From Blastocladiella emersonii ATCC 22665 (taxonomy: Eukaryota; Fungi; Blastocladiomycota), in contig JANHCV010000001.1 in the NCBI GenBank assembly GCA_025594325.1, forward strand, positions 5,078,961 to 5,142,960: DNA of 64,000 nt. The letters run 5' to 3'. Positions 22,450 to 30,769 of the stretch are shown here, one piece after another. Numbering within the stretch: the stretch's first letter is position 1; each line of letters opens with the position of its first letter. The translations under genes and the position numbers were made by a program. The notes under the pieces were generated by a model that searched no databases, was not told where the DNA came from, and saw only the letters and a list, made by a program, of their open reading frames with translations.

Positions 22450-24720
22450 ATGTATCCGCAACCGGCTCGACTGAGCCTGCTTGCGACACTCCTCGCAATC
22501 GCCGTCCTGGCGGCGCCAGCGGCCGATGCCTCAGTCCTGACCAAACGCGGCATCGCGGTCCCCGCGTCCGCCGACCATCACGTCGTGAGCGTGCGTGCGG
22601 TCCACCCGCGGACGGGACTCGCGCTCGCGACGCTGCAGAAGCGCGATGCAGCGACTGGCCGCGACCAGTACCGCGACAAGCTCGTCGTCCAGGTCTCGGG
22701 CGGGCCCGAGCCGATTGCGCTGGATCTCGAGGTACGGTAGTGATACCGCGATGAACGAGCGAGTTCCTGACACCGTCCGATCGACCGCGTAGTTGAACCG
22801 CGAGCTTCTCGGCCCGCAGTACCAGCACATTCTTGGCGACGCGCCATCGACGACCCCACCGCCCGACAACTGCTTCTACCGCGGAACGGTGCAGGGCCGC
22901 GCCGGGTCGTTGGTTGCGGTCAGCGCGTGCGAGGGCGACCTCCACGGCCTCGTCCAGGTCGATCCAACGACGCGGTACTCGATCCACGCGCTGTCGTCCG
23001 ACGGCGACACGACTGCCGGTACGACTCGTTCTGCGGCGGGTCTCTCCAAGCGCCACGTCCTAGTGCGCGACACGGGCCGGTCCGCGACGGGCGACCCCGA
23101 GGAGCCGCGCGTCGGGCACTGTCCGCAGTCGGACCCATCGTTCCACTCGCCGCGCGGCGACAGCCATTTCGACCGGCGTCACCTCGTCCCGGCGTCGTCG
23201 CTGCACCACGCGGATCCGCCCGCGTCGTCGTTCGTGCACCGCGCGGCGCCGCTGGTGGCGCTCATCAAGCGCGAGTACGCGGCGCGCAACAACAAGACGA
23301 TCGAGCTGATGCTGGCCAACGACTACCAGCGGTACCAGGCGTTCGGCAACGACACGGAGCTGACGGCGCTCGAGCTGGTCAACGTCGCCAACGTGCTGCT
23401 CACGAACGCGACGGGGATCCTCGCCGCGCCCTACAAGATCGCCGTCACGGTCGCTGGCCAGTACACGGCCACGTCGCCCAAGTGGGTGACGGGGAGCCCG
23501 AGTACCGTGGACGTCGGGACGCTGCTGCAGGAGTTTTGCCAGTGGCGCCAGTCGCAGCTCACGGCCGTCGCCAACGTGGGCAACTTTCTCCAGCTCAACG
23601 ACGCGGGCCACCTGCTGACGAACCGCACGCTGGTGTCGTCGGGCGTCTCGGCGGCCATCGACGGGTACTCGTACGTCGGCGGGATGTGCAAGGCGTCGTC
23701 GGCGTGCGGCGTCGACTACGCGCCGCGCACCATCAACCCGGCGTACCAGGGCACGGTCCTCGCGCATGAGCTGGGCCACAACCTCGGGTCCGGCCACGAC
23801 GGCTCGAATAACGCCTGCCCGAGTACCGGCTTCATCATGCAGCCCGCGGCGTGCTCCAACTGCGCCCAGCTCGCGACCACCTTCTCCAACTGCTCCAAGA
23901 GCGCCATCGAGTCGTTCTTCAACAGCGCCGACACGACGTGCCTCGACAACTCGCCGACTCTCTGCGGGTACGCTCCCCACCCTATCCCGCCCCAGCCATC
24001 GCGCGCTCTGACACTCGCTCGACGTGTAGCAACGGCATCGTCGACCCCGGAGAGCAGTGCGACAGCGGCGACCGGGTGAACGGGAGCGCGTGCTGCACCC
24101 GTTCGTGCACGCTCCGGTCGAACGCGGCGTGCGACGACAAGAACGGCGCGTGCTGCAAGAACTGCCAGCTGCTCGCCAAGGACACGGTGTGCCGCGCGCG
24201 GACCAACGACGCAGTCCGCTCCTCGTGCGACATCGCGGACGTGTGCACGGGCACGTCGCCCGCGTGCCCGGACCTGTCCGCGGCCAACGGCGCGACGTGT
24301 TTCGCGGACGTGCCCAAGAACAGCTCCAAGGGCTTCTGCAACAACGGGTGGTGCACGTCGCGCGCCAACGCGTGCGCCGCGTACGGGTACCCGTACAGCT
24401 CCGGGTGCGACAAGCCCGCGGGGGCGCAGGCGTGCACGCTGTTCTGCGCGGGACAGGACGGGAACGGGTGCGTCAGCTTCCAGTACAACGCCGCCGGGAC
24501 CAGCGTCATTGCGCCCGATTTCGGGCCGTGCCCGCTCGACGGCGGCAAGTCCGGGTACTGTCTCGCCGGGACGTGTGTCGCGGGATCGCAGGGACAGAAC
24601 GTCAACAGCACGTCGCCGAACGCGGGCGGGTCGCTCGTGTTTGGCGGCGGGAGCGAGGCTGCGCGGTGGATGGCCATGGCCATGGCCGCGGTTCCGCTAG
24701 TCCTCGCGGCGTGGCTCTGA
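22450..24720 (+). CDS. Secreted ADAM/reprolysin (M12B) metalloprotease with disintegrin domain and hydrophobic C-terminus (two introns, near 22733-22791 and 23969-24029)
   Basis: Signal peptide; prodomain CFYRGTV; HELGHNLGSGHD plus Met-turn FIMQP; CG|NGIVDPGEQCD and CDIADVCTGTSPACP disintegrin motifs. Confidence 0.93.
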
Positions 24721-24818: not shown

Positions 24819-25898
24819 CTACACGGCGGCAGCCGAATCGGCCGCCTTACCACCGTCCTGCTTCTTGGCAAACTCCTCGGCGAGCCGCGTCTGCTTGCGG
24901 TTGTACAGGAACAGCGCGGGCAGGGCCACGATCCAGTACAAGAAGTAGGTGATGGTGGTGACGAGCGTCCACTCGGACCGCCAGCCGAACAGCGCGCCGA
25001 TCAGCTGGAAGAACACGTTGCCCTCCTCGCCGTCAAACTCGCGGTCCTCGATCTCGAGAATCACGATCTCGCCGCCCGTCAGCTCCTCGACCTCGTGGCA
25101 GCCGCCCATGAACAGGCCGGCCGCGATGAAGAGGAGGAGGACCAGCGACACGTGCACGAACGCCTTGAGTGCGACCGTGTGGCCGCCCTTGTACACGAGC
25201 CAGCCGATCAGGCACCCAGTGATGATACCGGTGATGGCGGGCAGGATGATGGACTTGGCCGACGCCGACGACGAGGTACCGCCGAGCAGGACGAGCGTCT
25301 CGAGGCCCTCGCGCAGCACGACCGTGAACGAGAGCAGAAACATGGGCCACTTGTTCTTCTGCATCGTGGTCATGGCCTCCTCGGCCGCGTTGCGCAGCTT
25401 CTGCTCCCACTTGAGCTGCCAGTACTCGACCTTGACCATGGTGAAGGCCATGACCGTGATCAGCGCGCACGCCAGGAACTTGAAGAAGGCCTCGAACAGG
25501 ATCTCGAACGTCTCCGTGCCCCAGATGTCGACGCGCAGCGCCTGGAACAGGATGATGAACACGATCGCGAGCGCGATCGAGACGGCGGCACCCGCCGCGG
25601 CGCCGAGGTACACCTGGCGGATCATGAGCTTGCGCAGGTCGTCGTTGCTCGCCATGATGCGGTTGATGAACGTCACCAGCACCGCAATGATGACGGCCAT
25701 CTCGAGGACCTCGCGTGACTACCGAGCGATCGACGCGGCCGTCAGCTTGTTGAGCTCGTCGCTAACGACGTCGACGCGTCGCCAACCACGTACGAAGATG
25801 AAGTAAGCCGGCACATCGAACCAGCCCAACGAGCGGAATTTGGTCTCGACTTCACTGTCAGGCACACCGAACGTGCGCGTGATGCCACTGTCTGACAT
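24819..25898 (-). CDS. FTR1: High-affinity iron permease FTR1 (intron 25719-25793)
   Basis: Two RExxE motifs (spliced FIF|SREVLE and VLREGLET); multiple TM segments; FIAAGLF and ALFGW motifs. Confidence 0.95.
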
Positions 25899-26470
25899 GG
25901 TTGATGGTCGAGAGTAGTGTGAAGGAGGGTGAGGATGAGGATGAGCGGAAGACGACCAGAACGACGACGGGACGCGGGGCACTGCTTCACTTTGTAGAAA
26001 CCCTGGACTCGAGCGAGGACGGCGAACAACTCGACGAAAATGCCGCTATCGCAGTTGACTCGTCACGTACACCCGCATGACGTCGGCAGGCGCAAGCGAG
26101 GCGAAGATTATATCTGATGGCAGGCGGCGAAACGTTGCTGGTCCCTTGTGTGAACGGAGGTGTCCACGCCAGCAGTTCTTGCCGGGCACATGGCCTCGAT
26201 CCAAAGCGAGGCGCCGCCACCGCACACGAGTGCCAAGCATCGCGAGTGATCCGGGCGGCGCCACCCACGGTAAATCATGCAGACTTGATTGATCGATAAA
26301 GAGCAGAAACACAACGAGGGACTTTTCAGCTGCCTCCCGATCCTCGTCGTTGTCTTCTCGATTGGGAGCACTCGCCATCCTCTCCAAGGGTTCTCTCCGT
26401 GCCAGGGTTTGATAAAACAGCGGCGACCCCCGTCGTCGCGACCTCGACGCTGCCTCGAACATCTTTCACC

Positions 26471-27817
26471 ATGGCGCGGACACAAGTCTTCCTCTTCGCC
26501 GCCCTGCTCGCGGTGCTGCTGCAGTCGGTGTCCCCGGTCGCCGCGGCCGAGGCCGAGTCGACGCCGAACCCGTGCCCGCGCAACGACAAGTGCGCCATCT
26601 GGACCTACTACGTGGCCGCCGAGGAGGTCGAGTGGGACTACGCTCCCTCGGGCAAGGACGGGTTCTCGGGCGACTCGCTGACGACGGCCGGGTCCGACCC
26701 CGCCGTGTTCGCGGCGCAGGCCGAGGGCCGCATCGGCAAAAAGTACCTCAAGGCCGTGTACAAGCAGTATACGGACGACAAGTTCGAGAAGCAGGTCGCG
26801 CGGCGCGCCGAGGACGAGCACCTCGGCATCATGGGCCCCGTGCTGCGCGCCGAGGTCAACCAGGTGATCCGCGTCGTGTTCAAGAACAAGGCCAAGACGA
26901 ACCCGTACTCGATCCACCCGCACGGCGTCTTCTACGACAAGGACAACGAGGGCGCCGGCATGGGCCCCGACGCGGGCGCGGGCGCCTCGGTCGACCCCGG
27001 CAAGACGTTCACGTACACGTGGCCCGTGCCCAACCGCGCCGGTCCCGGCCCGAACGACGGCAGCGCCATGGTGTGGGCGTACCACTCGCACGTCATGGAG
27101 TCGGACATTTACGACGGCCTGTACGGCGCGCTCGTGGTCTACGAGTCGGGCATTCTGGGTGACAACGGGCTGCCCAAGTACGACTCGAGCTCGTTCCGCG
27201 TCAAGAAGGAGTTCTTTTTGTCGTTTGTCGTCGGCAACGAGAACGAGTCGTCGTTCCTCAAGGCCAACATTGCCAAGTACGCCAAGAACACGACGTACAC
27301 GCCCGAGGAGTTTGCGGCGCTCCCCGCCACCATCAAGTCCAACACGACGGCGCTGGCCGCGCTCGACACGTCGGACGCGTTCAAGGAGTCGAACATGATG
27401 CACAACATCAACGGCTACTTCTACGGCAACCTGCCGACGCTGCAGATGGACCTGGGCGACTACGTGCGGTTCTACCTGCTCGCGTTCGGGACCGAGGTCG
27501 ACATCCACACGATCCACTGGCACGGCATCACGGTCATGTCCGAGGGCCACCGCCGCGACGTGCTCGAGGCGTTCCCGGCGACGTTCCGGTGGGCCGATGC
27601 GCACGTCGACAACCCGGGCAACTGGCTGCTGCACTGCCACGTCCACGACCACTTCAAGGCCGGCATGTACATGTCGTTCAACGTGTCCAACCCCAAGGAG
27701 GTCAAGACCCTCAACGACATGATGGCCGCCACCGCCGCGCCATCGGCGCTCGGCTCGCGCAGCATCCTCGCGGCCGCTGGCGCCGCGGCCCTCGCCGTGT
27801 TTGTGCTAATTGCTTAA
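26471..27817 (+). CDS. Two-domain ceruloplasmin/hephaestin-like multicopper oxidase, signal peptide plus GPI-type tail, 448 aa
   Basis: Ceruloplasmin-type strings YYVAAEEVEWDYAP, RIGKKYLKAVYKQYTD, HLGIMGPVLRAEV, PYSIHPHG; copper ligands HPH and YHSH (domain 1), HTIHWHG and HCHVHDHFKAGM (domain 2). Confidence 0.92.
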   Translation: MARTQVFLFAALLAVLLQSVSPVAAAEAESTPNPCPRNDKCAIWTYYVAAEEVEWDYAPSGKDGFSGDSLTTAGSDPAVFAAQAEGRIGKKYLKAVYKQYTDDKFEKQVARRAEDEHLGIMGPVLRAEVNQVIRVVFKNKAKTNPYSIHPHGVFYDKDNEGAGMGPDAGAGASVDPGKTFTYTWPVPNRAGPGPNDGSAMVWAYHSHVMESDIYDGLYGALVVYESGILGDNGLPKYDSSSFRVKKEFFLSFVVGNENESSFLKANIAKYAKNTTYTPEEFAALPATIKSNTTALAALDTSDAFKESNMMHNINGYFYGNLPTLQMDLGDYVRFYLLAFGTEVDIHTIHWHGITVMSEGHRRDVLEAFPATFRWADAHVDNPGNWLLHCHVHDHFKAGMYMSFNVSNPKEVKTLNDMMAATAAPSALGSRSILAAAGAAALAVFVLIA

Positions 27818-28155: not shown

Positions 28156-30168
28156 ATGAACACTTCCGAGCCCAAGATGCGCGCACGGGCCATCAGCGTT
28201 GACGGGCCGCTGGACCACCGGCCGGGCGGCAGCAGCAGTGCGCCGAGTTCGCGCAACAGCGGTGGCGACACGGTGCTCGTCATGGCGGCGGGCGACGCGA
28301 GCAGCACGACGACGGCGTCCGATTCGCAGGCCAACCTGCTGCGCGGGTCCCCGTCCCCGTCTCCGCCCGCGACGGGCAACCTGCCGTGGAAGGACCGCCT
28401 GCACCGGCTCGTGCACGGGCCGACGCCGCCCATCGAGCTATCGCTCGGCCCGCCGTGGATGCCGCGGTTCGCCGGGTGGTTCTCCAACCTCGTCCCATCG
28501 CGGTGGCGCGGCGCGTACCTGACCTTCTACCACGTCGTGATGATCGCGTCGCTGCTAGTCTGGACGTACCTCGCCAACTACGCGGCCGTGACGTACACGG
28601 TCGATTCGCGGGGCGCGCGCGTGGCCGAGGTGCCCGCCGAGTACGGGTGCCGCGCTCAGCCGCTGCTCGCGTCCAAGTGCGGCGTGCTGGGGATCGACTG
28701 CCGGCCGTTCGCGACCCGCGCGTACACGGTGCGGTGTCCGGCAGACTGCGGGTCGGCGCGGTCGCTCAGCGCGTTCTACGTCGGTGGCGACGTCGCGTAC
28801 CTGGTCCCGCCCGTCATCGGCAACGGCGTGTACCGCGGCGACAGCTGGGCGTGCGTCGCGGGCGTGCATGCGGGCGTACTGCAGAGTGCGGCGGGCGGGT
28901 GCATGCGCGTGGTGCCGGGCGGCGAGGTCGCGGGGTTCGCGAGCGCGGAGCGCAACGGGATCACGTCGTTGGCGTTCAACGGGACGTACCCGGCATCGTT
29001 CCGCGTCGAGGCCGTCGCCGAGGGCGACCAGCAGTGGTGCGGGACGCCCGTCGGGCCAGCGACCGCGTACTTCTACGTCTTGCTGCCGTGGCTGCTGCTC
29101 GGCCACCCGAGCGCGGGCCACTGGGTCGTAGCGACGGCGTGCTACGTTTTCTACTTCGTGATCTTCCTCGGCGTCGACGCGCAGCGCAGCGACGATTTCA
29201 TCACAAGCGCGGTCGCGCAGCTGACCCCGTACGTGGCCGTGACGCTGGTGCTCGTGCGGCTCGTGTTCGCGCGGATCCTGCCGCGCCCGCTCGCCGCGTA
29301 CCCGGTCGAGACCCTGGGGCTCGTCCTCGCACCCGCGCTCGCGATGTTGTTCCTCGAGGTGATCCAGGGCGCGCTGCCGCCGTTCACGCTGACATCGGCG
29401 CTGTTCGCGTCGGCGTCGCGCGCCACGCTCGGGCTCGTGCTCCTCGCCGTCTTCCTCGTCGCCGCGTCGCTCCAGGGTCTGTCCCTGTACCGCACGGGCA
29501 CGCTGGCGCGGACGGCTCTCGAGTACACGGTCGGCTCGGTCCTCCTGTTCGCGGTCCCGCCGCTCCTCAGCCTGTCGCCGCACGTGCACCACTACATGGT
29601 GGGCATGTTCCTGATGCCGGCGCTCCGGTGGACACGGACGCGCACCGCGCTGGTCTTTCTCGGCGTGCTGTGGGGTCTGTTCATGCACGGGATCGCGCGG
29701 TGGGGGTTCGACTCGCCGCTAACCACCGCGCTCGCCGCGCGGCAGGCCGTCGGGCTGCTGGCGGGCACCCCGCGGCCCGTGTGGAACGCGACGGCGACGG
29801 CGGCCACGGATGACGGCGTGTCGCTCGCGTGGTCGCTGGCGATCCCGCGCGTCGACGGTGCGGGGAAGCGGATCGGCGGGAACCTCACAGACCTGGTCGG
29901 CGCAGGCGGGGAGGAGACGGCGGCGCGCGCGGGGATCGCCGCGTACGCCGTGTTCCTCAACGACGTCGAGGTGCAGCGCACGCTGCGCGCGTCCGTGACG
30001 CTCGCGGTGGATGCGGGCGCGGCGCGCGGCGGGATGATCGCGTGGACCGACCCGATGGCGGTGCGCGTGGTGCCGCGCCGCGGGGGCGCGATGCTGGATA
30101 GCGGGCCGGTCCTGCTCGTCTGGCGCAACGGGACGACCAAGGAGCTGCCTGCGTGGAAGCCGACGTGA
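28156..30168 (+). CDS. LCCL-domain multi-pass membrane protein
   Basis: LCCL motif YRGDSWACVAGVHAGVL...GGCMRV...RNGITS...SF followed by several TM helices and PHVHHY; intronless 670-aa ORF. Confidence 0.85.
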   Translation: MNTSEPKMRARAISVDGPLDHRPGGSSSAPSSRNSGGDTVLVMAAGDASSTTTASDSQANLLRGSPSPSPPATGNLPWKDRLHRLVHGPTPPIELSLGPPWMPRFAGWFSNLVPSRWRGAYLTFYHVVMIASLLVWTYLANYAAVTYTVDSRGARVAEVPAEYGCRAQPLLASKCGVLGIDCRPFATRAYTVRCPADCGSARSLSAFYVGGDVAYLVPPVIGNGVYRGDSWACVAGVHAGVLQSAAGGCMRVVPGGEVAGFASAERNGITSLAFNGTYPASFRVEAVAEGDQQWCGTPVGPATAYFYVLLPWLLLGHPSAGHWVVATACYVFYFVIFLGVDAQRSDDFITSAVAQLTPYVAVTLVLVRLVFARILPRPLAAYPVETLGLVLAPALAMLFLEVIQGALPPFTLTSALFASASRATLGLVLLAVFLVAASLQGLSLYRTGTLARTALEYTVGSVLLFAVPPLLSLSPHVHHYMVGMFLMPALRWTRTRTALVFLGVLWGLFMHGIARWGFDSPLTTALAARQAVGLLAGTPRPVWNATATAATDDGVSLAWSLAIPRVDGAGKRIGGNLTDLVGAGGEETAARAGIAAYAVFLNDVEVQRTLRASVTLAVDAGAARGGMIAWTDPMAVRVVPRRGGAMLDSGPVLLVWRNGTTKELPAWKPT

Positions 30169-30218: not shown

Positions 30219-30769
30219 TCAAGCGGTGCGCAGAATCAGGTGCACGCCCGAATCCGTCGAGACGGGCCCGCTGAGCTCGCCGACCTGGAGGGCAAACGCC
30301 GCGTCCTCGAACGGCTTCTGCATCTTGCCGCGGGAGAAGAAGCCGAGGTCGCCGCCGGTGCGCGCCGACGAGCAGTCGGACTCGGTGCGGGCGAGCGTCG
30401 GGAGGTCGGTCTCCCCCGCAACGATGCGGGCGCGGTGGGTCTCGATCTGGGCGAGCGCCTCGTCGTAGGTCAGCGTGATGGCCTCGTTGCGCCACGACGA
30501 CGGGCGGCGCGAGTCGCGGTGCTTGACGAGCAGGTGCGACGCGCGGATCTCGCCGTCGCGCGGGGTCTGCGCGTCGCCCACGGGCCGCTCCCACTGGCTC
30601 ACGCGCGTCTCCGGGTTGTAGTAGTACAGCTTGTTCTTGGTCGTCGACATGCGCTGCTCCCACGGCGCGGGCAGGTCGGTCGGCTGGTCGGCGGACTAGA
30701 CCGCATGGAGGGCGCGACGCGTTAGCGTATGGTTGTTGCATGGTTCTTCGTTGCATTGCATACGCTCAT
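30219..30769 (-). CDS. PIN1: Peptidyl-prolyl isomerase Pin1/Ess1 (WW plus parvulin domain; 6-nt first exon ATGAGC)
   Basis: WW domain [10 protein letters not shown]...YYYN...SQWERP; [20 protein letters not shown]...MQKPFE, GVHLILR. Confidence 0.97.

What the first reader, a model, noticed from the sequence alone, without database searches (positions are those of the whole stretch)
26471..27817. Single two-domain ceruloplasmin unit carrying a complete copper and iron ligand set
Seen: only two cupredoxin domains in 448 aa. Domain 1 has HPH and HSH (no type-1 Cys); domain 2 has H..HWH and HCH...H....M (type-1 site with axial Met), the type-B two-domain MCO pattern. The sequence follows ceruloplasmin/hephaestin rather than laccase or Fet3. 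FKESNMMH, GTEVDIH and HCHVHDH mirror the residues of the ceruloplasmin domain-6 cation site (recalled as E935, H940, E272/E971, D1025; numbering should be verified). Established: six-domain ceruloplasmin is thought to derive from a trimer of two-domain units. Inference: a GPI-anchored homotrimeric mini-ceruloplasmin ferroxidase resembling that ancestral state.
Basis: partly seen in the sequence, partly recalled or inferred. Interest (0 to 1): 0.87.

Follow-up and report, generated by a model that had tools for sequence, protein, structure and literature searches.

The report
Two-domain ceruloplasmin-type oxidase beside FTR1
The water mould Blastocladiella emersonii has a one-third-size version of the animal copper enzyme ceruloplasmin, with every copper and iron contact intact, next to an iron-channel gene; it most likely oxidises iron for uptake and shows what the animal enzyme may have looked like before its gene tripled.

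Summary
Window 26471-27817(+) is an intronless 448-aa gene of Blastocladiella emersonii. It encodes a signal peptide, two cupredoxin domains and a hydrophobic C-terminal tail.

- **Similarity:** it aligns end to end with each of the three two-domain units of ceruloplasmin, at about 40% identity.
- **Ligands:** all 8 trinuclear-cluster His, the type-1 H/C/H/M set in domain 2, and the four ceruloplasmin Fe(II)-site residues are present (E306=E935, H311=H940, E342=E971/E272, D393=D1025).
- **Fragment test:** it is not part of a longer gene.
- **Link to FTR1:** it sits head to head with an FTR1 iron permease. The same pairing occurs in Catenaria and Quaeritorhiza. In Cladochytrium and Hyaloraphidium the oxidase lies inside FTR1, between TM6 and TM7.
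- **Phylogeny:** it belongs to a well-supported eukaryotic two-domain clade of early fungi, an ichthyosporean and ochrophyte algae.

My reading is a membrane-anchored homotrimeric ferroxidase that feeds Ftr1.

The "ancestral state" claim is favoured but not secure. The clade is sister to the animal units at 89/87, and AU tests reject no alternative. Two-domain bacterial relatives with the same ligand sets are common. The GPI anchor and the trimer remain inferences.

The scan had already found and followed up a near-identical second copy about 91 kb upstream (s1-076263).

The parts
26471..27817 (+). Complete intronless CDS of the two-domain ceruloplasmin-type multicopper oxidase (448 aa plus stop)
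   Evidence: ORF list. It is 443/448 identical to the GenBank protein KAI9190449.1 of B. emersonii ATCC 22665, which is the paralogous copy, and has the same length. Pfam finds Cu-oxidase_3 and Cu-oxidase_2.
26471..26548 (+). N-terminal signal peptide (about residues 1-26)
   Evidence: A hydrophobic helix at residues 4-17 with low pLDDT in the model. A hydrophobic N-terminus is conserved in orthologues. The cleavage site was not predicted with a tool.
26597..27160 (+). Cupredoxin domain 1 (residues about 43-230). It carries trinuclear-cluster ligands H149, H151, H205 and H207 and has no type-1 site (S206 where Cys would be).
   Evidence: model pLDDT above 90.
27203..27691 (+). Cupredoxin domain 2 (residues about 245-407). 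Type-1 site H346, C389, H394, M399. Trinuclear-cluster ligands H349, H351, H388, H390. Ceruloplasmin-type Fe(II) site E306, H311, D393, plus E342, which would be donated to the neighbouring subunit's site.
   Evidence: Residue-by-residue alignment to 1KCW; column census; ceruloplasmin site definition in PMC3738974.
27725..27814 (+). C-terminal Ala/Ser/Gly-rich spacer and a 17-residue hydrophobic tail ending at the last residue. It looks like a GPI attachment signal.
   Evidence: Hydropathy and tail comparison across orthologues. Paraphysoderma and Cladochytrium have instead a transmembrane helix plus a cytosolic tail. No GPI predictor was available.
25899..26470 (.). 572-bp shared intergenic region between the divergent FTR1 and oxidase start codons; a presumed bidirectional promoter
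   Evidence: Coordinates. There is one TGATAA at 26410 and no extended ATCWGATAA. Function was not tested.
25794..25898 (-). FTR1 exon 1 (35 codons, ATG at 25898)
   Evidence: Read from the sequence. The spliced product places the first RExLE motif (REVLE) in frame.
25719..25793 (-). FTR1 intron, 75 nt, GTACGT...TAG
   Evidence: Inferred from splice consensus and from the alignment of the product with Catenaria FTR1 over residues 1-333. No RNA evidence.
24819..25718 (-). FTR1 exon 2 (299 codons plus stop). The whole protein is 334 aa, with REVLE and REGLE motifs and 7 TM-like segments.
   Evidence: Pfam FTR1, E 1e-36; splicing, motifs and hydropathy.

Best explanation
The gene encodes a secreted, membrane-anchored (probably GPI-anchored) two-domain multicopper oxidase of the ceruloplasmin/hephaestin type.

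**Assembly.** Each chain carries half of a trinuclear copper cluster in domain 1 and the other half in domain 2. As in ceruloplasmin's pseudo-trimer and in all solved two-domain oxidases, the clusters can therefore form only between chains. The active enzyme should be a homotrimer with three type-1 coppers, three trinuclear clusters and three ceruloplasmin-type Fe(II) sites. Each Fe(II) site would be built from E306, H311 and D393 of one chain and E342 of its neighbour.

**Function.** It oxidises Fe(II) to Fe(III) at the cell surface and hands the Fe(III) to the Ftr1 permease encoded head to head with it. It would thus play the role that three-domain Fet3 plays in yeast and six-domain FOX1 plays in Chlamydomonas.

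**Shown:** the domain make-up, the ligand sets, the family assignment, the gene linkage and the fusions.

**Inferred:** the trimer, the GPI anchor, ferroxidase activity and Fe(III) hand-over.
For: 1. Full-length collinear similarity to each ceruloplasmin unit. AF2 model pLDDT 90.2. The best structural matches are ceruloplasmin and hephaestin, TM 0.72-0.74 at 36-40% identity. Two-domain laccase SLAC scores only 0.46.
2. All 12 copper ligands and all 4 Fe-site residues are present and map onto human residues.
3. An FTR1 gene with both RExLE motifs and 7 TM-like segments is transcribed divergently, 572 bp away.
4. The same head-to-head pair occurs in Catenaria and in the chytrid Quaeritorhiza. 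By the scan's record it also occurs in a near-identical second copy on the same chromosome.
5. In Cladochytrium and Hyaloraphidium genomic DNA the oxidase is collinear inside FTR1, between TM6 and TM7. That is an extracellular loop, so the topology fits. Nowakowskiella has FTR1 followed by the oxidase in one partial protein.
6. Clade members found linked to FTR1 all keep the E-H-E-D set. Calcarisporiella (AATE) and Syncephalis (EHMD) lack it and are not linked.
7. A membrane anchor, either a C-terminal hydrophobic tail or a TM helix, is conserved among the fungal orthologues.
Against: - No enzyme assay, no expression data (no RNA run was listed) and no multimer model.
- Allomyces and Paraphysoderma orthologues keep the Fe site but are not next to FTR1.
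- In Amoebidium the oxidase is fused to a ZIP transporter rather than to FTR1. ZIP proteins carry divalent metal, so the oxidase may serve metal transport more broadly than Fe(III) hand-over.
- Only one plain TGATAA lies in the shared promoter, so iron regulation is not shown.
- Fe-site residues are also conserved in ceruloplasmin units that do not oxidise iron. Unit 1 of the vertebrate representative shows E-H-E-D in my census.
Confidence: 0.72

Rival explanations
1. It is a surface oxidase for another substrate (phenols or amines as a laccase-like enzyme, Mn(II) or Cu(I)). Its position next to FTR1 is then not functional coupling.
For: Multicopper oxidases are promiscuous. Automatic names for bacterial relatives include 'manganese oxidase'. 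The Amoebidium fusion is to a ZIP divalent-metal transporter, not FTR1. Some orthologues are unlinked to FTR1.
Against: The complete ceruloplasmin Fe(II) site is conserved. Linkage to FTR1 recurs in three fungal phyla, and in chytrids the oxidase is physically inserted into FTR1. Members that lost Fe-site residues are the ones found without FTR1.
Confidence: 0.12
2. The eukaryotic two-domain clade is not a relic of the pre-triplication ceruloplasmin ancestor. It stems from an old transfer of a bacterial two-domain oxidase into an early eukaryote, with further spread between eukaryotes. On this reading it tells us nothing direct about the origin of animal ceruloplasmin.
For: The two-domain relatives outside the named eukaryotic clade have 42-50% identity and the same ligand sets. 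I presume they are bacterial, although only a few were checked. Three of them sit in ordinary bacterial gene contexts. The AU test does not reject a tree that unites all two-domain proteins (p 0.25). Ochrophyte algae nest among fungi in the clade, which suggests some transfer between eukaryotes.
Against: The best tree puts the clade (100/98) next to the animal units (100/99) at 89/87, not inside the bacteria. The clade spans Blastocladiomycota, Chytridiomycota, Monoblepharidomycota, Zoopagomycota, Mucoromycota and an ichthyosporean. The Tribonema gene is intron-rich and sits in a nuclear context.
Confidence: 0.3
3. It is a secondary reduction: a six-domain ceruloplasmin-like gene lost four domains.
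For: A single origin of all six-domain units is not rejected (p 0.31). Vasin et al. 2013 (PMC3600357) argued for an ancestral six-domain protein.
Against: The protein lies outside the clade formed by animal units 1, 2 and 3 (100/99), so it does not derive from any one of them. It keeps all eight trinuclear-cluster ligands in one unit. Among the animal and green-algal six-domain units sampled, none keeps the full set in a single unit (Cu=0). The Paulinella protein shows that triplication happens independently and starts from fully liganded units.
Confidence: 0.05

Closest known systems
Vertebrate ceruloplasmin / hephaestin (six-domain multicopper ferroxidases)
   Same: Same fold and sequence family, about 40% identity per two-domain unit. 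Same type-1 ligands with axial Met, same trinuclear-cluster His pattern, and the same four Fe(II)-site residues as domains 6 and 4. Membrane-anchored forms exist: the hephaestin TM helix and, from my own knowledge, a GPI-ceruloplasmin isoform.
   Different: It has one unit instead of three fused units. Every unit would be fully active (3 T1 + 3 TNC per trimer), whereas ceruloplasmin has a single trinuclear cluster. It is partnered with an FTR1 importer. Animals lack FTR1 and use these enzymes with ferroportin for export (PMC11817551).
Fet3p-Ftr1p high-affinity iron uptake complex of yeasts and other fungi
   Same: An oxidase and an FTR1 permease encoded as a divergent gene pair. The oxidase is extracellular and membrane-anchored. 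The permease has two RExLE motifs.
   Different: Fet3 is a three-domain monomeric laccase-type oxidase with a different iron site. Here there are two domains, no PF00394 middle domain and a ceruloplasmin-type iron site.
Chlamydomonas FOX1 / Volvox multicopper ferroxidase with FTR1
   Same: A ceruloplasmin-family oxidase used with FTR1 for iron uptake in a microbial eukaryote.
   Different: FOX1-type proteins have six domains. Their units form their own deep groups in the tree, apart from this clade.
Bacterial type-B two-domain multicopper oxidases (SLAC and relatives)
   Same: Two cupredoxin domains, with the type-1 site in domain 2 only. Homotrimers with inter-subunit trinuclear clusters.
   Different: The similarity is only distant (E about 1e-10 to 1e-13 over domain 1 alone, TM 0.46). 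They have no ceruloplasmin Fe site. A separate set of ceruloplasmin-like two-domain proteins, presumed bacterial and uncharacterised as far as I could find, is much closer (42-50% identity).
Fusarium oxysporum FOYG_17127, a two-domain 'ceruloplasmin homolog' (Zhang et al. 2020, PMC6994591)
   Same: A fungal two-domain copper oxidase modelled as a trimer and compared with ceruloplasmin.
   Different: It was reported as a recent horizontal acquisition on a lineage-specific chromosome, with homologues in extremophile bacteria and archaea, and modelled partly on SLAC and the Nitrosomonas oxidase. No FTR1 link was reported.

Membership tests
Multicopper oxidase superfamily | Cupredoxin domains with the four His-X-His motifs of the trinuclear cluster and an H-C-H-(M) type-1 site | tested here: met
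   Pfam PF07732 + PF07731. H149/H151, H205/H207, H349/H351, H388/H390; H346, C389, H394, M399.
Ceruloplasmin/hephaestin sequence family | Closer in sequence and fold to ceruloplasmin units than to laccase, Fet3, CueO or nitrite reductase | tested here: met
   phmmer E 5e-194 to ceruloplasmin, against 1e-13 for SLAC over domain 1 only. Foldseek TM 0.72-0.74 to ceruloplasmin and hephaestin, below 0.5 for the others.
Ceruloplasmin/hephaestin sequence family | Six cupredoxin domains in one chain | tested here: not met
   Only two domains in 448 aa; no further cupredoxin coding sequence in the window. It is a relative of the family's repeating unit, not a six-domain member.
Ceruloplasmin-type ferroxidase site | Two Glu, one His and one Asp next to the type-1 copper (E935, H940, D1025 plus E272/E971 from the neighbouring unit) | tested here: met
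   E306, H311, D393, E342 aligned to 1KCW numbering; site definition from PMC3738974. Activity itself could not be tested.
Type-B two-domain multicopper oxidase | Type-1 copper in domain 2 only; trinuclear-cluster ligands split between domain 1 and domain 2 | tested here: met
   Domain 1 has HSH (no Cys); domain 2 has HCH...H....M.
Type-B two-domain multicopper oxidase | Homotrimeric assembly with inter-subunit trinuclear clusters | not testable with these tools
   Only a monomer could be predicted. The trimer is inferred from the ligand distribution and from ceruloplasmin's pseudo-threefold arrangement.
Fet3-type fungal ferroxidase | Three cupredoxin domains, including the PF00394 middle domain | tested here: not met
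   No PF00394 hit; two domains only.
Ferroxidase-permease iron uptake system | Oxidase genetically or physically coupled to an FTR1-family permease with RExLE motifs | tested here: met
   A divergent pair here and in Catenaria and Quaeritorhiza. The oxidase is inserted in FTR1 in Cladochytrium and Hyaloraphidium.
GPI-anchored protein | N-terminal signal peptide plus a C-terminal signal made of small omega-region residues, a short polar spacer and a terminal hydrophobic stretch with no cytosolic tail | tested here: inconclusive
   The features are visible by eye and by hydropathy (residues 419-448) and are conserved in Blastocladiomycota and Syncephalis. No GPI predictor or experiment was available.

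The most novel reading that the evidence does not exclude
The opisthokont two-domain clade is the surviving pre-triplication form of animal ceruloplasmin and hephaestin. On this reading the family's original job was iron import, as a homotrimer sitting on a trimeric Ftr1 permease. In some chytrids the two are one polypeptide, which forces 3:3 stoichiometry. Animals then fused three units, lost two trinuclear clusters, lost FTR1 and re-used the enzyme for iron export.
Probability: 0.35. Interest if true: 0.8.

Novelty: new variant of a known kind. Interest (0 to 1): 0.66.

Why it matters
Textbook accounts give eukaryotes only three-domain (Fet3, laccase) and six-domain (ceruloplasmin, FOX1) copper oxidases. 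Vasin et al. 2013 say so explicitly. In those accounts the two-domain precursor of ceruloplasmin is hypothetical.

Here is a living eukaryotic two-domain ceruloplasmin-type gene with every metal site intact. It is present across early-diverging fungi, an animal relative and some algae, and it is tied to the FTR1 permease by gene order and by gene fusion. I draw three consequences.

1. It is a third architectural solution for the ferroxidase-permease iron uptake system.
2. It is a small, symmetric, experimentally tractable model for ceruloplasmin chemistry, with three identical active units.
3. The chytrid insertion proteins lead to a testable prediction that Ftr1 works as a trimer.

I found no paper describing any of this in the searchable library. 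The proteins are deposited only as 'hypothetical protein' or 'Cupredoxin'.

Tried and rejected
- **Expression and splicing.** No RNA run was listed for the 3.3-kb region, and an 'any'-kind search for the gene alone returned only DNA runs from the source sample. Read laying was therefore not used, and the transcript structure rests on the ORF, the GenBank model of the paralogue and intronless orthologues.
- **Allomyces.** I looked for an unannotated FTR1 next to the Allomyces orthologue and found none among the ORFs (≥80 aa) of the 3-kb gap.
- **Bacterial relatives.** I looked for FTR1/EfeU next to three bacterial relatives and found none.
- **Deep branching.** Three AU tests were tried. Two were non-significant (p 0.25 and 0.31). 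The third (animal plus green-algal units only) did not finish in time.
- **Midpoint rooting** of the careful tree puts the green-algal units at the base. I give that no weight, because no outgroup (SLAC or nitrite reductase) sequence was available as a protein id.
- **Iron-GATA motif.** I searched the shared promoter for the extended ATCWGATAA motif. It is absent; there is only one TGATAA.
- **Rejected readings.** Laccase, nitrite reductase, Fet3 and a fragment of a spliced six-domain gene are all rejected.
- **Trimer modelling** was not possible. The structure tool folds single chains and returns no coordinates.
Full report
**What is there.** The window is high-GC (about 66%) nuclear DNA. The best database match names the organism as Blastocladiella emersonii ATCC 22665.

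At 26471-27817(+) there is one uninterrupted ORF of 448 codons. It starts with a hydrophobic signal-like N-terminus. It contains two cupredoxin domains, Pfam Cu-oxidase_3 at residues 120-225 and Cu-oxidase_2 at 307-407, with no middle Cu-oxidase domain. It ends in an Ala/Ser/Gly-rich spacer and a 17-residue hydrophobic tail that runs to the last residue. There are four N-glycosylation sequons.

The GenBank protein KAI9190449.1 (H9P43_001883, 'hypothetical protein') is 443/448 identical. The five differences are confined to the signal peptide and the tail. It sits in one 90% cluster with the window's own product, and both are on the same 5.14-Mb contig. The module therefore exists in two near-identical copies.

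**Checking the observation.** phmmer against PDB sequences gives ceruloplasmin at E 5e-194. The whole query aligns three times, once to each two-domain unit, at E 9e-51, 2e-71 and 1e-65. Coagulation factors V and VIII follow. Two-domain laccases (SLAC) match only domain 1, at about 1e-10 to 1e-13.

I aligned residues 300-415 to 1KCW, whose chain uses mature human numbering. The results were:

- **Fe(II) site:** E306=E935, H311=H940, D393=D1025, and E342=E971, the position homologous to E272 in unit 1.
- **Type-1 site:** H346=H975, C389=C1021, H394=H1026, M399=M1031.
- **Trinuclear cluster, domain 2:** H349/H351=H978/H980 and H388/H390=H1020/H1022.
- **Trinuclear cluster, domain 1:** H149/H151 and H205/H207, with Ser206 where a type-1 Cys would be.

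Vashchenko and MacGillivray (PMC3738974) give the ceruloplasmin iron sites as E272/E935/H940/D1025 in domain 6 and E597/H602/D684/E971 in domain 4. So are the motifs, the coordinates and the 'type-B' pattern, with the type-1 site in domain 2 only.

**Structure.** An AlphaFold2 model built on a 77-sequence alignment has mean pLDDT 90.2 and pTM 0.83. Only the signal peptide and the C-terminal 40 residues have low confidence. Foldseek puts rat and human ceruloplasmin first (TM by query 0.72-0.74, 372-390 aligned columns, 38-40% identity). Factors V and VIII come next, and SLAC-type two-domain laccases score only about 0.46. In Swiss-Prot models the top hits are hephaestin-like, hephaestin, HEPHL1 and ceruloplasmin. 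Nitrite reductases and three-domain oxidases score below 0.5.

**Not a fragment.** tblastn of the protein against the whole window finds only itself. The upstream neighbour is on the other strand. The downstream neighbour is an unrelated LCCL-domain membrane protein. Orthologues have the same size: Catenaria 445 aa, B. britannica 434 aa, Allomyces 442 aa. The Allomyces gene is also a single exon.

**Context: FTR1.** On the minus strand, 572 bp from the oxidase ATG, lies an FTR1 permease (Pfam E 1e-36). I read its structure as follows:

- exon 1: 25898-25794
- a 75-nt GTACGT...TAG intron: 25793-25719
- exon 2: 25718-24819

The product is 334 aa, with REVLE and REGLE motifs and seven TM-like segments. 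It aligns over residues 1-333 with the Catenaria locus.

The linkage between oxidase and FTR1 recurs in other fungi:

| Species | Arrangement |
|---|---|
| Catenaria anguillulae | head-to-head pair |
| Quaeritorhiza haematococci (chytrid) | head-to-head pair |
| Hyaloraphidium curvatum | FTR1 and oxidase in one annotated protein; collinear in genomic DNA |
| Nowakowskiella | FTR1 and oxidase in one annotated (partial) protein |
| Cladochytrium replicatum | oxidase collinear inside FTR1 in genomic DNA |
| Allomyces, Paraphysoderma | not linked |
| Syncephalis | two oxidase genes head to head, no FTR1 |

Following a lead in s1-076263, I ran BLASTP and tblastn on the Cladochytrium and Hyaloraphidium genomic DNA. 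The order on one strand is FTR1 TM1-6, then the oxidase, then the conserved loop motif and TM7 of FTR1. Both public gene models are truncated at one end.

The oxidase is thus inserted in the last extracellular loop of the permease, which is topologically sensible. This is Rosetta-stone evidence that the two proteins work together.

Three bacterial relatives that I looked up sit in ordinary bacterial neighbourhoods without FTR1/EfeU.

**Family and phylogeny.** An exhaustive HMMER search finds 3,504 relatives at E below 0.001. I cut 266 retrieved proteins into 381 two-domain units with an HMM and scored the ligand columns. Of 169 single-unit proteins, 130 have all copper ligands, and 64 of those also have the full E-H-E-D iron site.

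The 'complete set in one unit' is therefore common. Most of these single-unit proteins fall outside the eukaryotic clade described below. I take them to be bacterial, but only a few were checked: two carry MAG names, Gaiellaceae and Paracoccaceae, and three sit in bacterial gene contexts.

In a FastTree of 380 units the window protein falls in a 17-member clade. Sixteen of its members carry eukaryotic names; the other (P0018) is an unnamed metagenome sequence.

- **Blastocladiomycota:** Blastocladiella, Catenaria, Allomyces, Paraphysoderma
- **Chytrids:** Quaeritorhiza, Nowakowskiella, Cladochytrium
- **Monoblepharidomycota:** Hyaloraphidium
- **Zoopagomycota:** Syncephalis, Thamnocephalis
- **Mucoromycota:** Calcarisporiella
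- **Ichthyosporea:** Amoebidium
- **Ochrophyte algae:** Tribonema, Phaeothamnion

The Tribonema gene is intron-rich and lies in a nuclear context.

A careful IQ-TREE analysis (LG+C20+F+G4 PMSF, 73 units) gave four main results:

- The eukaryotic two-domain clade has support 100/98.
- All animal units form one clade at 100/99. Units 1, 2 and 3 each form a subclade, so there was one triplication before animals diversified.
- The two clades are sisters at 89/87.
- The three Paulinella units cluster together at 100/100, which indicates an independent triplication.

AU tests do not reject a tree that unites all two-domain proteins (ΔlnL 14.8, p 0.25). Nor do they reject a single origin of all six-domain units (ΔlnL 11.0, p 0.31).

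What is robust is that the window protein is not derived from any one unit of an animal-type six-domain protein, and that it belongs to an old, broadly distributed eukaryotic lineage. What is only favoured is that this lineage is the closest surviving relative of the ancestor of animal ceruloplasmin.

**Mechanism.** In ceruloplasmin the single trinuclear cluster lies between domain 1 (unit 1) and domain 6 (unit 3). The domain-6 iron site borrows E272 from unit 1. These are established facts (PMC3738974; the 1KCW alignment).

A single chain with the domain-1 half and the domain-2 half of the cluster can therefore complete its clusters only by ring assembly of three chains, as solved two-domain oxidases do. 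That would give three type-1 coppers, three trinuclear clusters and three iron sites per trimer. This step is inference. The tools fold single chains only.

Fe(II), presumably made by a surface reductase, would bind at E306/H311/D393 of one chain plus E342 of the neighbouring chain. It would pass one electron to the type-1 copper through H394. The Fe(III) would then go to Ftr1.

The chytrid insertion proteins imply one oxidase unit per permease, and hence a 3:3 complex.

Membrane anchoring is conserved but varies in form:

- Blastocladiella, Catenaria, B. britannica, Allomyces and Syncephalis end in a terminal hydrophobic tail after small residues. This looks like a GPI signal.
- Paraphysoderma has a TM helix plus a short cytosolic tail.
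- The chytrid insertion proteins are anchored through FTR1 itself.

**Caveats.**

- There are no expression data.
- Iron regulation is not shown. There is one TGATAA in the promoter and no extended iron-GATA motif.
- In Amoebidium the oxidase is fused to a ZIP transporter (from a transcriptome assembly). This hints that coupling to metal transport may be broader than Fe(III) hand-over.
- Clade members that have lost Fe-site residues are, where examined, not linked to FTR1: Calcarisporiella (AATE, plus one lost cluster His), Syncephalis (EHMD), Thamnocephalis and B. britannica copy b. This fits the ferroxidase reading for the members that keep the site.

**Literature.** Seven full-text searches found no description of eukaryotic two-domain ceruloplasmin-type oxidases or of oxidase-FTR1 insertion proteins. 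Vasin et al. 2013 state that eukaryotes have only three- or six-domain forms. Zhang et al. 2020 describe a different, horizontally acquired two-domain 'ceruloplasmin homolog' in clinical Fusarium oxysporum. A 2025 review of ferroxidase-permease systems does not mention two-domain oxidases.

**Verdict.** FTR1 linkage and fusion strengthen it. The trimer, the GPI anchor and the ancestral status remain open. I class it as a new variant of the known ferroxidase-permease system and a new eukaryotic member class of a known protein family. The scan had already noted and followed up the near-identical second copy on other DNA of this genome (s1-076263).

Noticed in passing
P0218 (Amoebidium parasiticum, EukProt transcript): The two-domain ceruloplasmin-type oxidase is fused to the C-terminus of a ZIP metal transporter (Pfam Zip 14-300, oxidase 396-696). 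ZIP proteins end outside the cell, so the topology fits. It comes from a transcriptome assembly and could be chimeric.
   Followed up: partly
L008:3689-5945 (Cladochytrium) and L009:4102-6792 (Hyaloraphidium): Both public gene models of the FTR1-oxidase insertion proteins are truncated. The Cladochytrium model lacks the upstream FTR1 part. The Hyaloraphidium model stops just before TM7, which is encoded about 20 bp downstream on the same strand.
   Followed up: partly
P0122 (Paulinella micropora, 1275 aa): A six-domain protein whose three units are each other's closest relatives (100/100). Two of the three units keep complete copper sets and all three keep the iron site. This looks like an independent and fairly recent triplication.
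   Followed up: partly
same 5.14-Mb contig, about 91 kb upstream of the window (not in the window): A second, 99%-identical copy of the oxidase (KAI9190449.1). By the scan's note s1-076263 it is again head to head with FTR1, which suggests a recent segmental duplication of the module.
   Followed up: partly
window 22793-24720 (+): Reprolysin/ADAM-type metalloprotease ORF (Pfam E 2e-24), followed in another frame by a Cys-rich disintegrin-like ORF that ends in a hydrophobic tail. This is probably one gene with an intron or a frame change.
   Followed up: no
window 28156-30168 (+): A 670-aa multi-pass membrane protein with an LCCL domain (Pfam E 2e-14), directly downstream of the oxidase.
   Followed up: no
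window 30219-30650 (-): Pin1-type peptidyl-prolyl isomerase (WW domain plus rotamase), 143 aa, apparently missing the start of the WW domain in this ORF.
   Followed up: no
L004:4014-7530 (Syncephalis fuscata): Two multicopper oxidase genes lie head to head with no FTR1. The one examined has E-H-M-D instead of E-H-E-D at the iron site.
   Followed up: no
window 26410: The only WGATAA in the 572-bp shared promoter. No extended ATCWGATAA iron-GATA repressor motif is present in this copy, whereas a scan note reports an exact motif in the upstream copy.
   Followed up: partly
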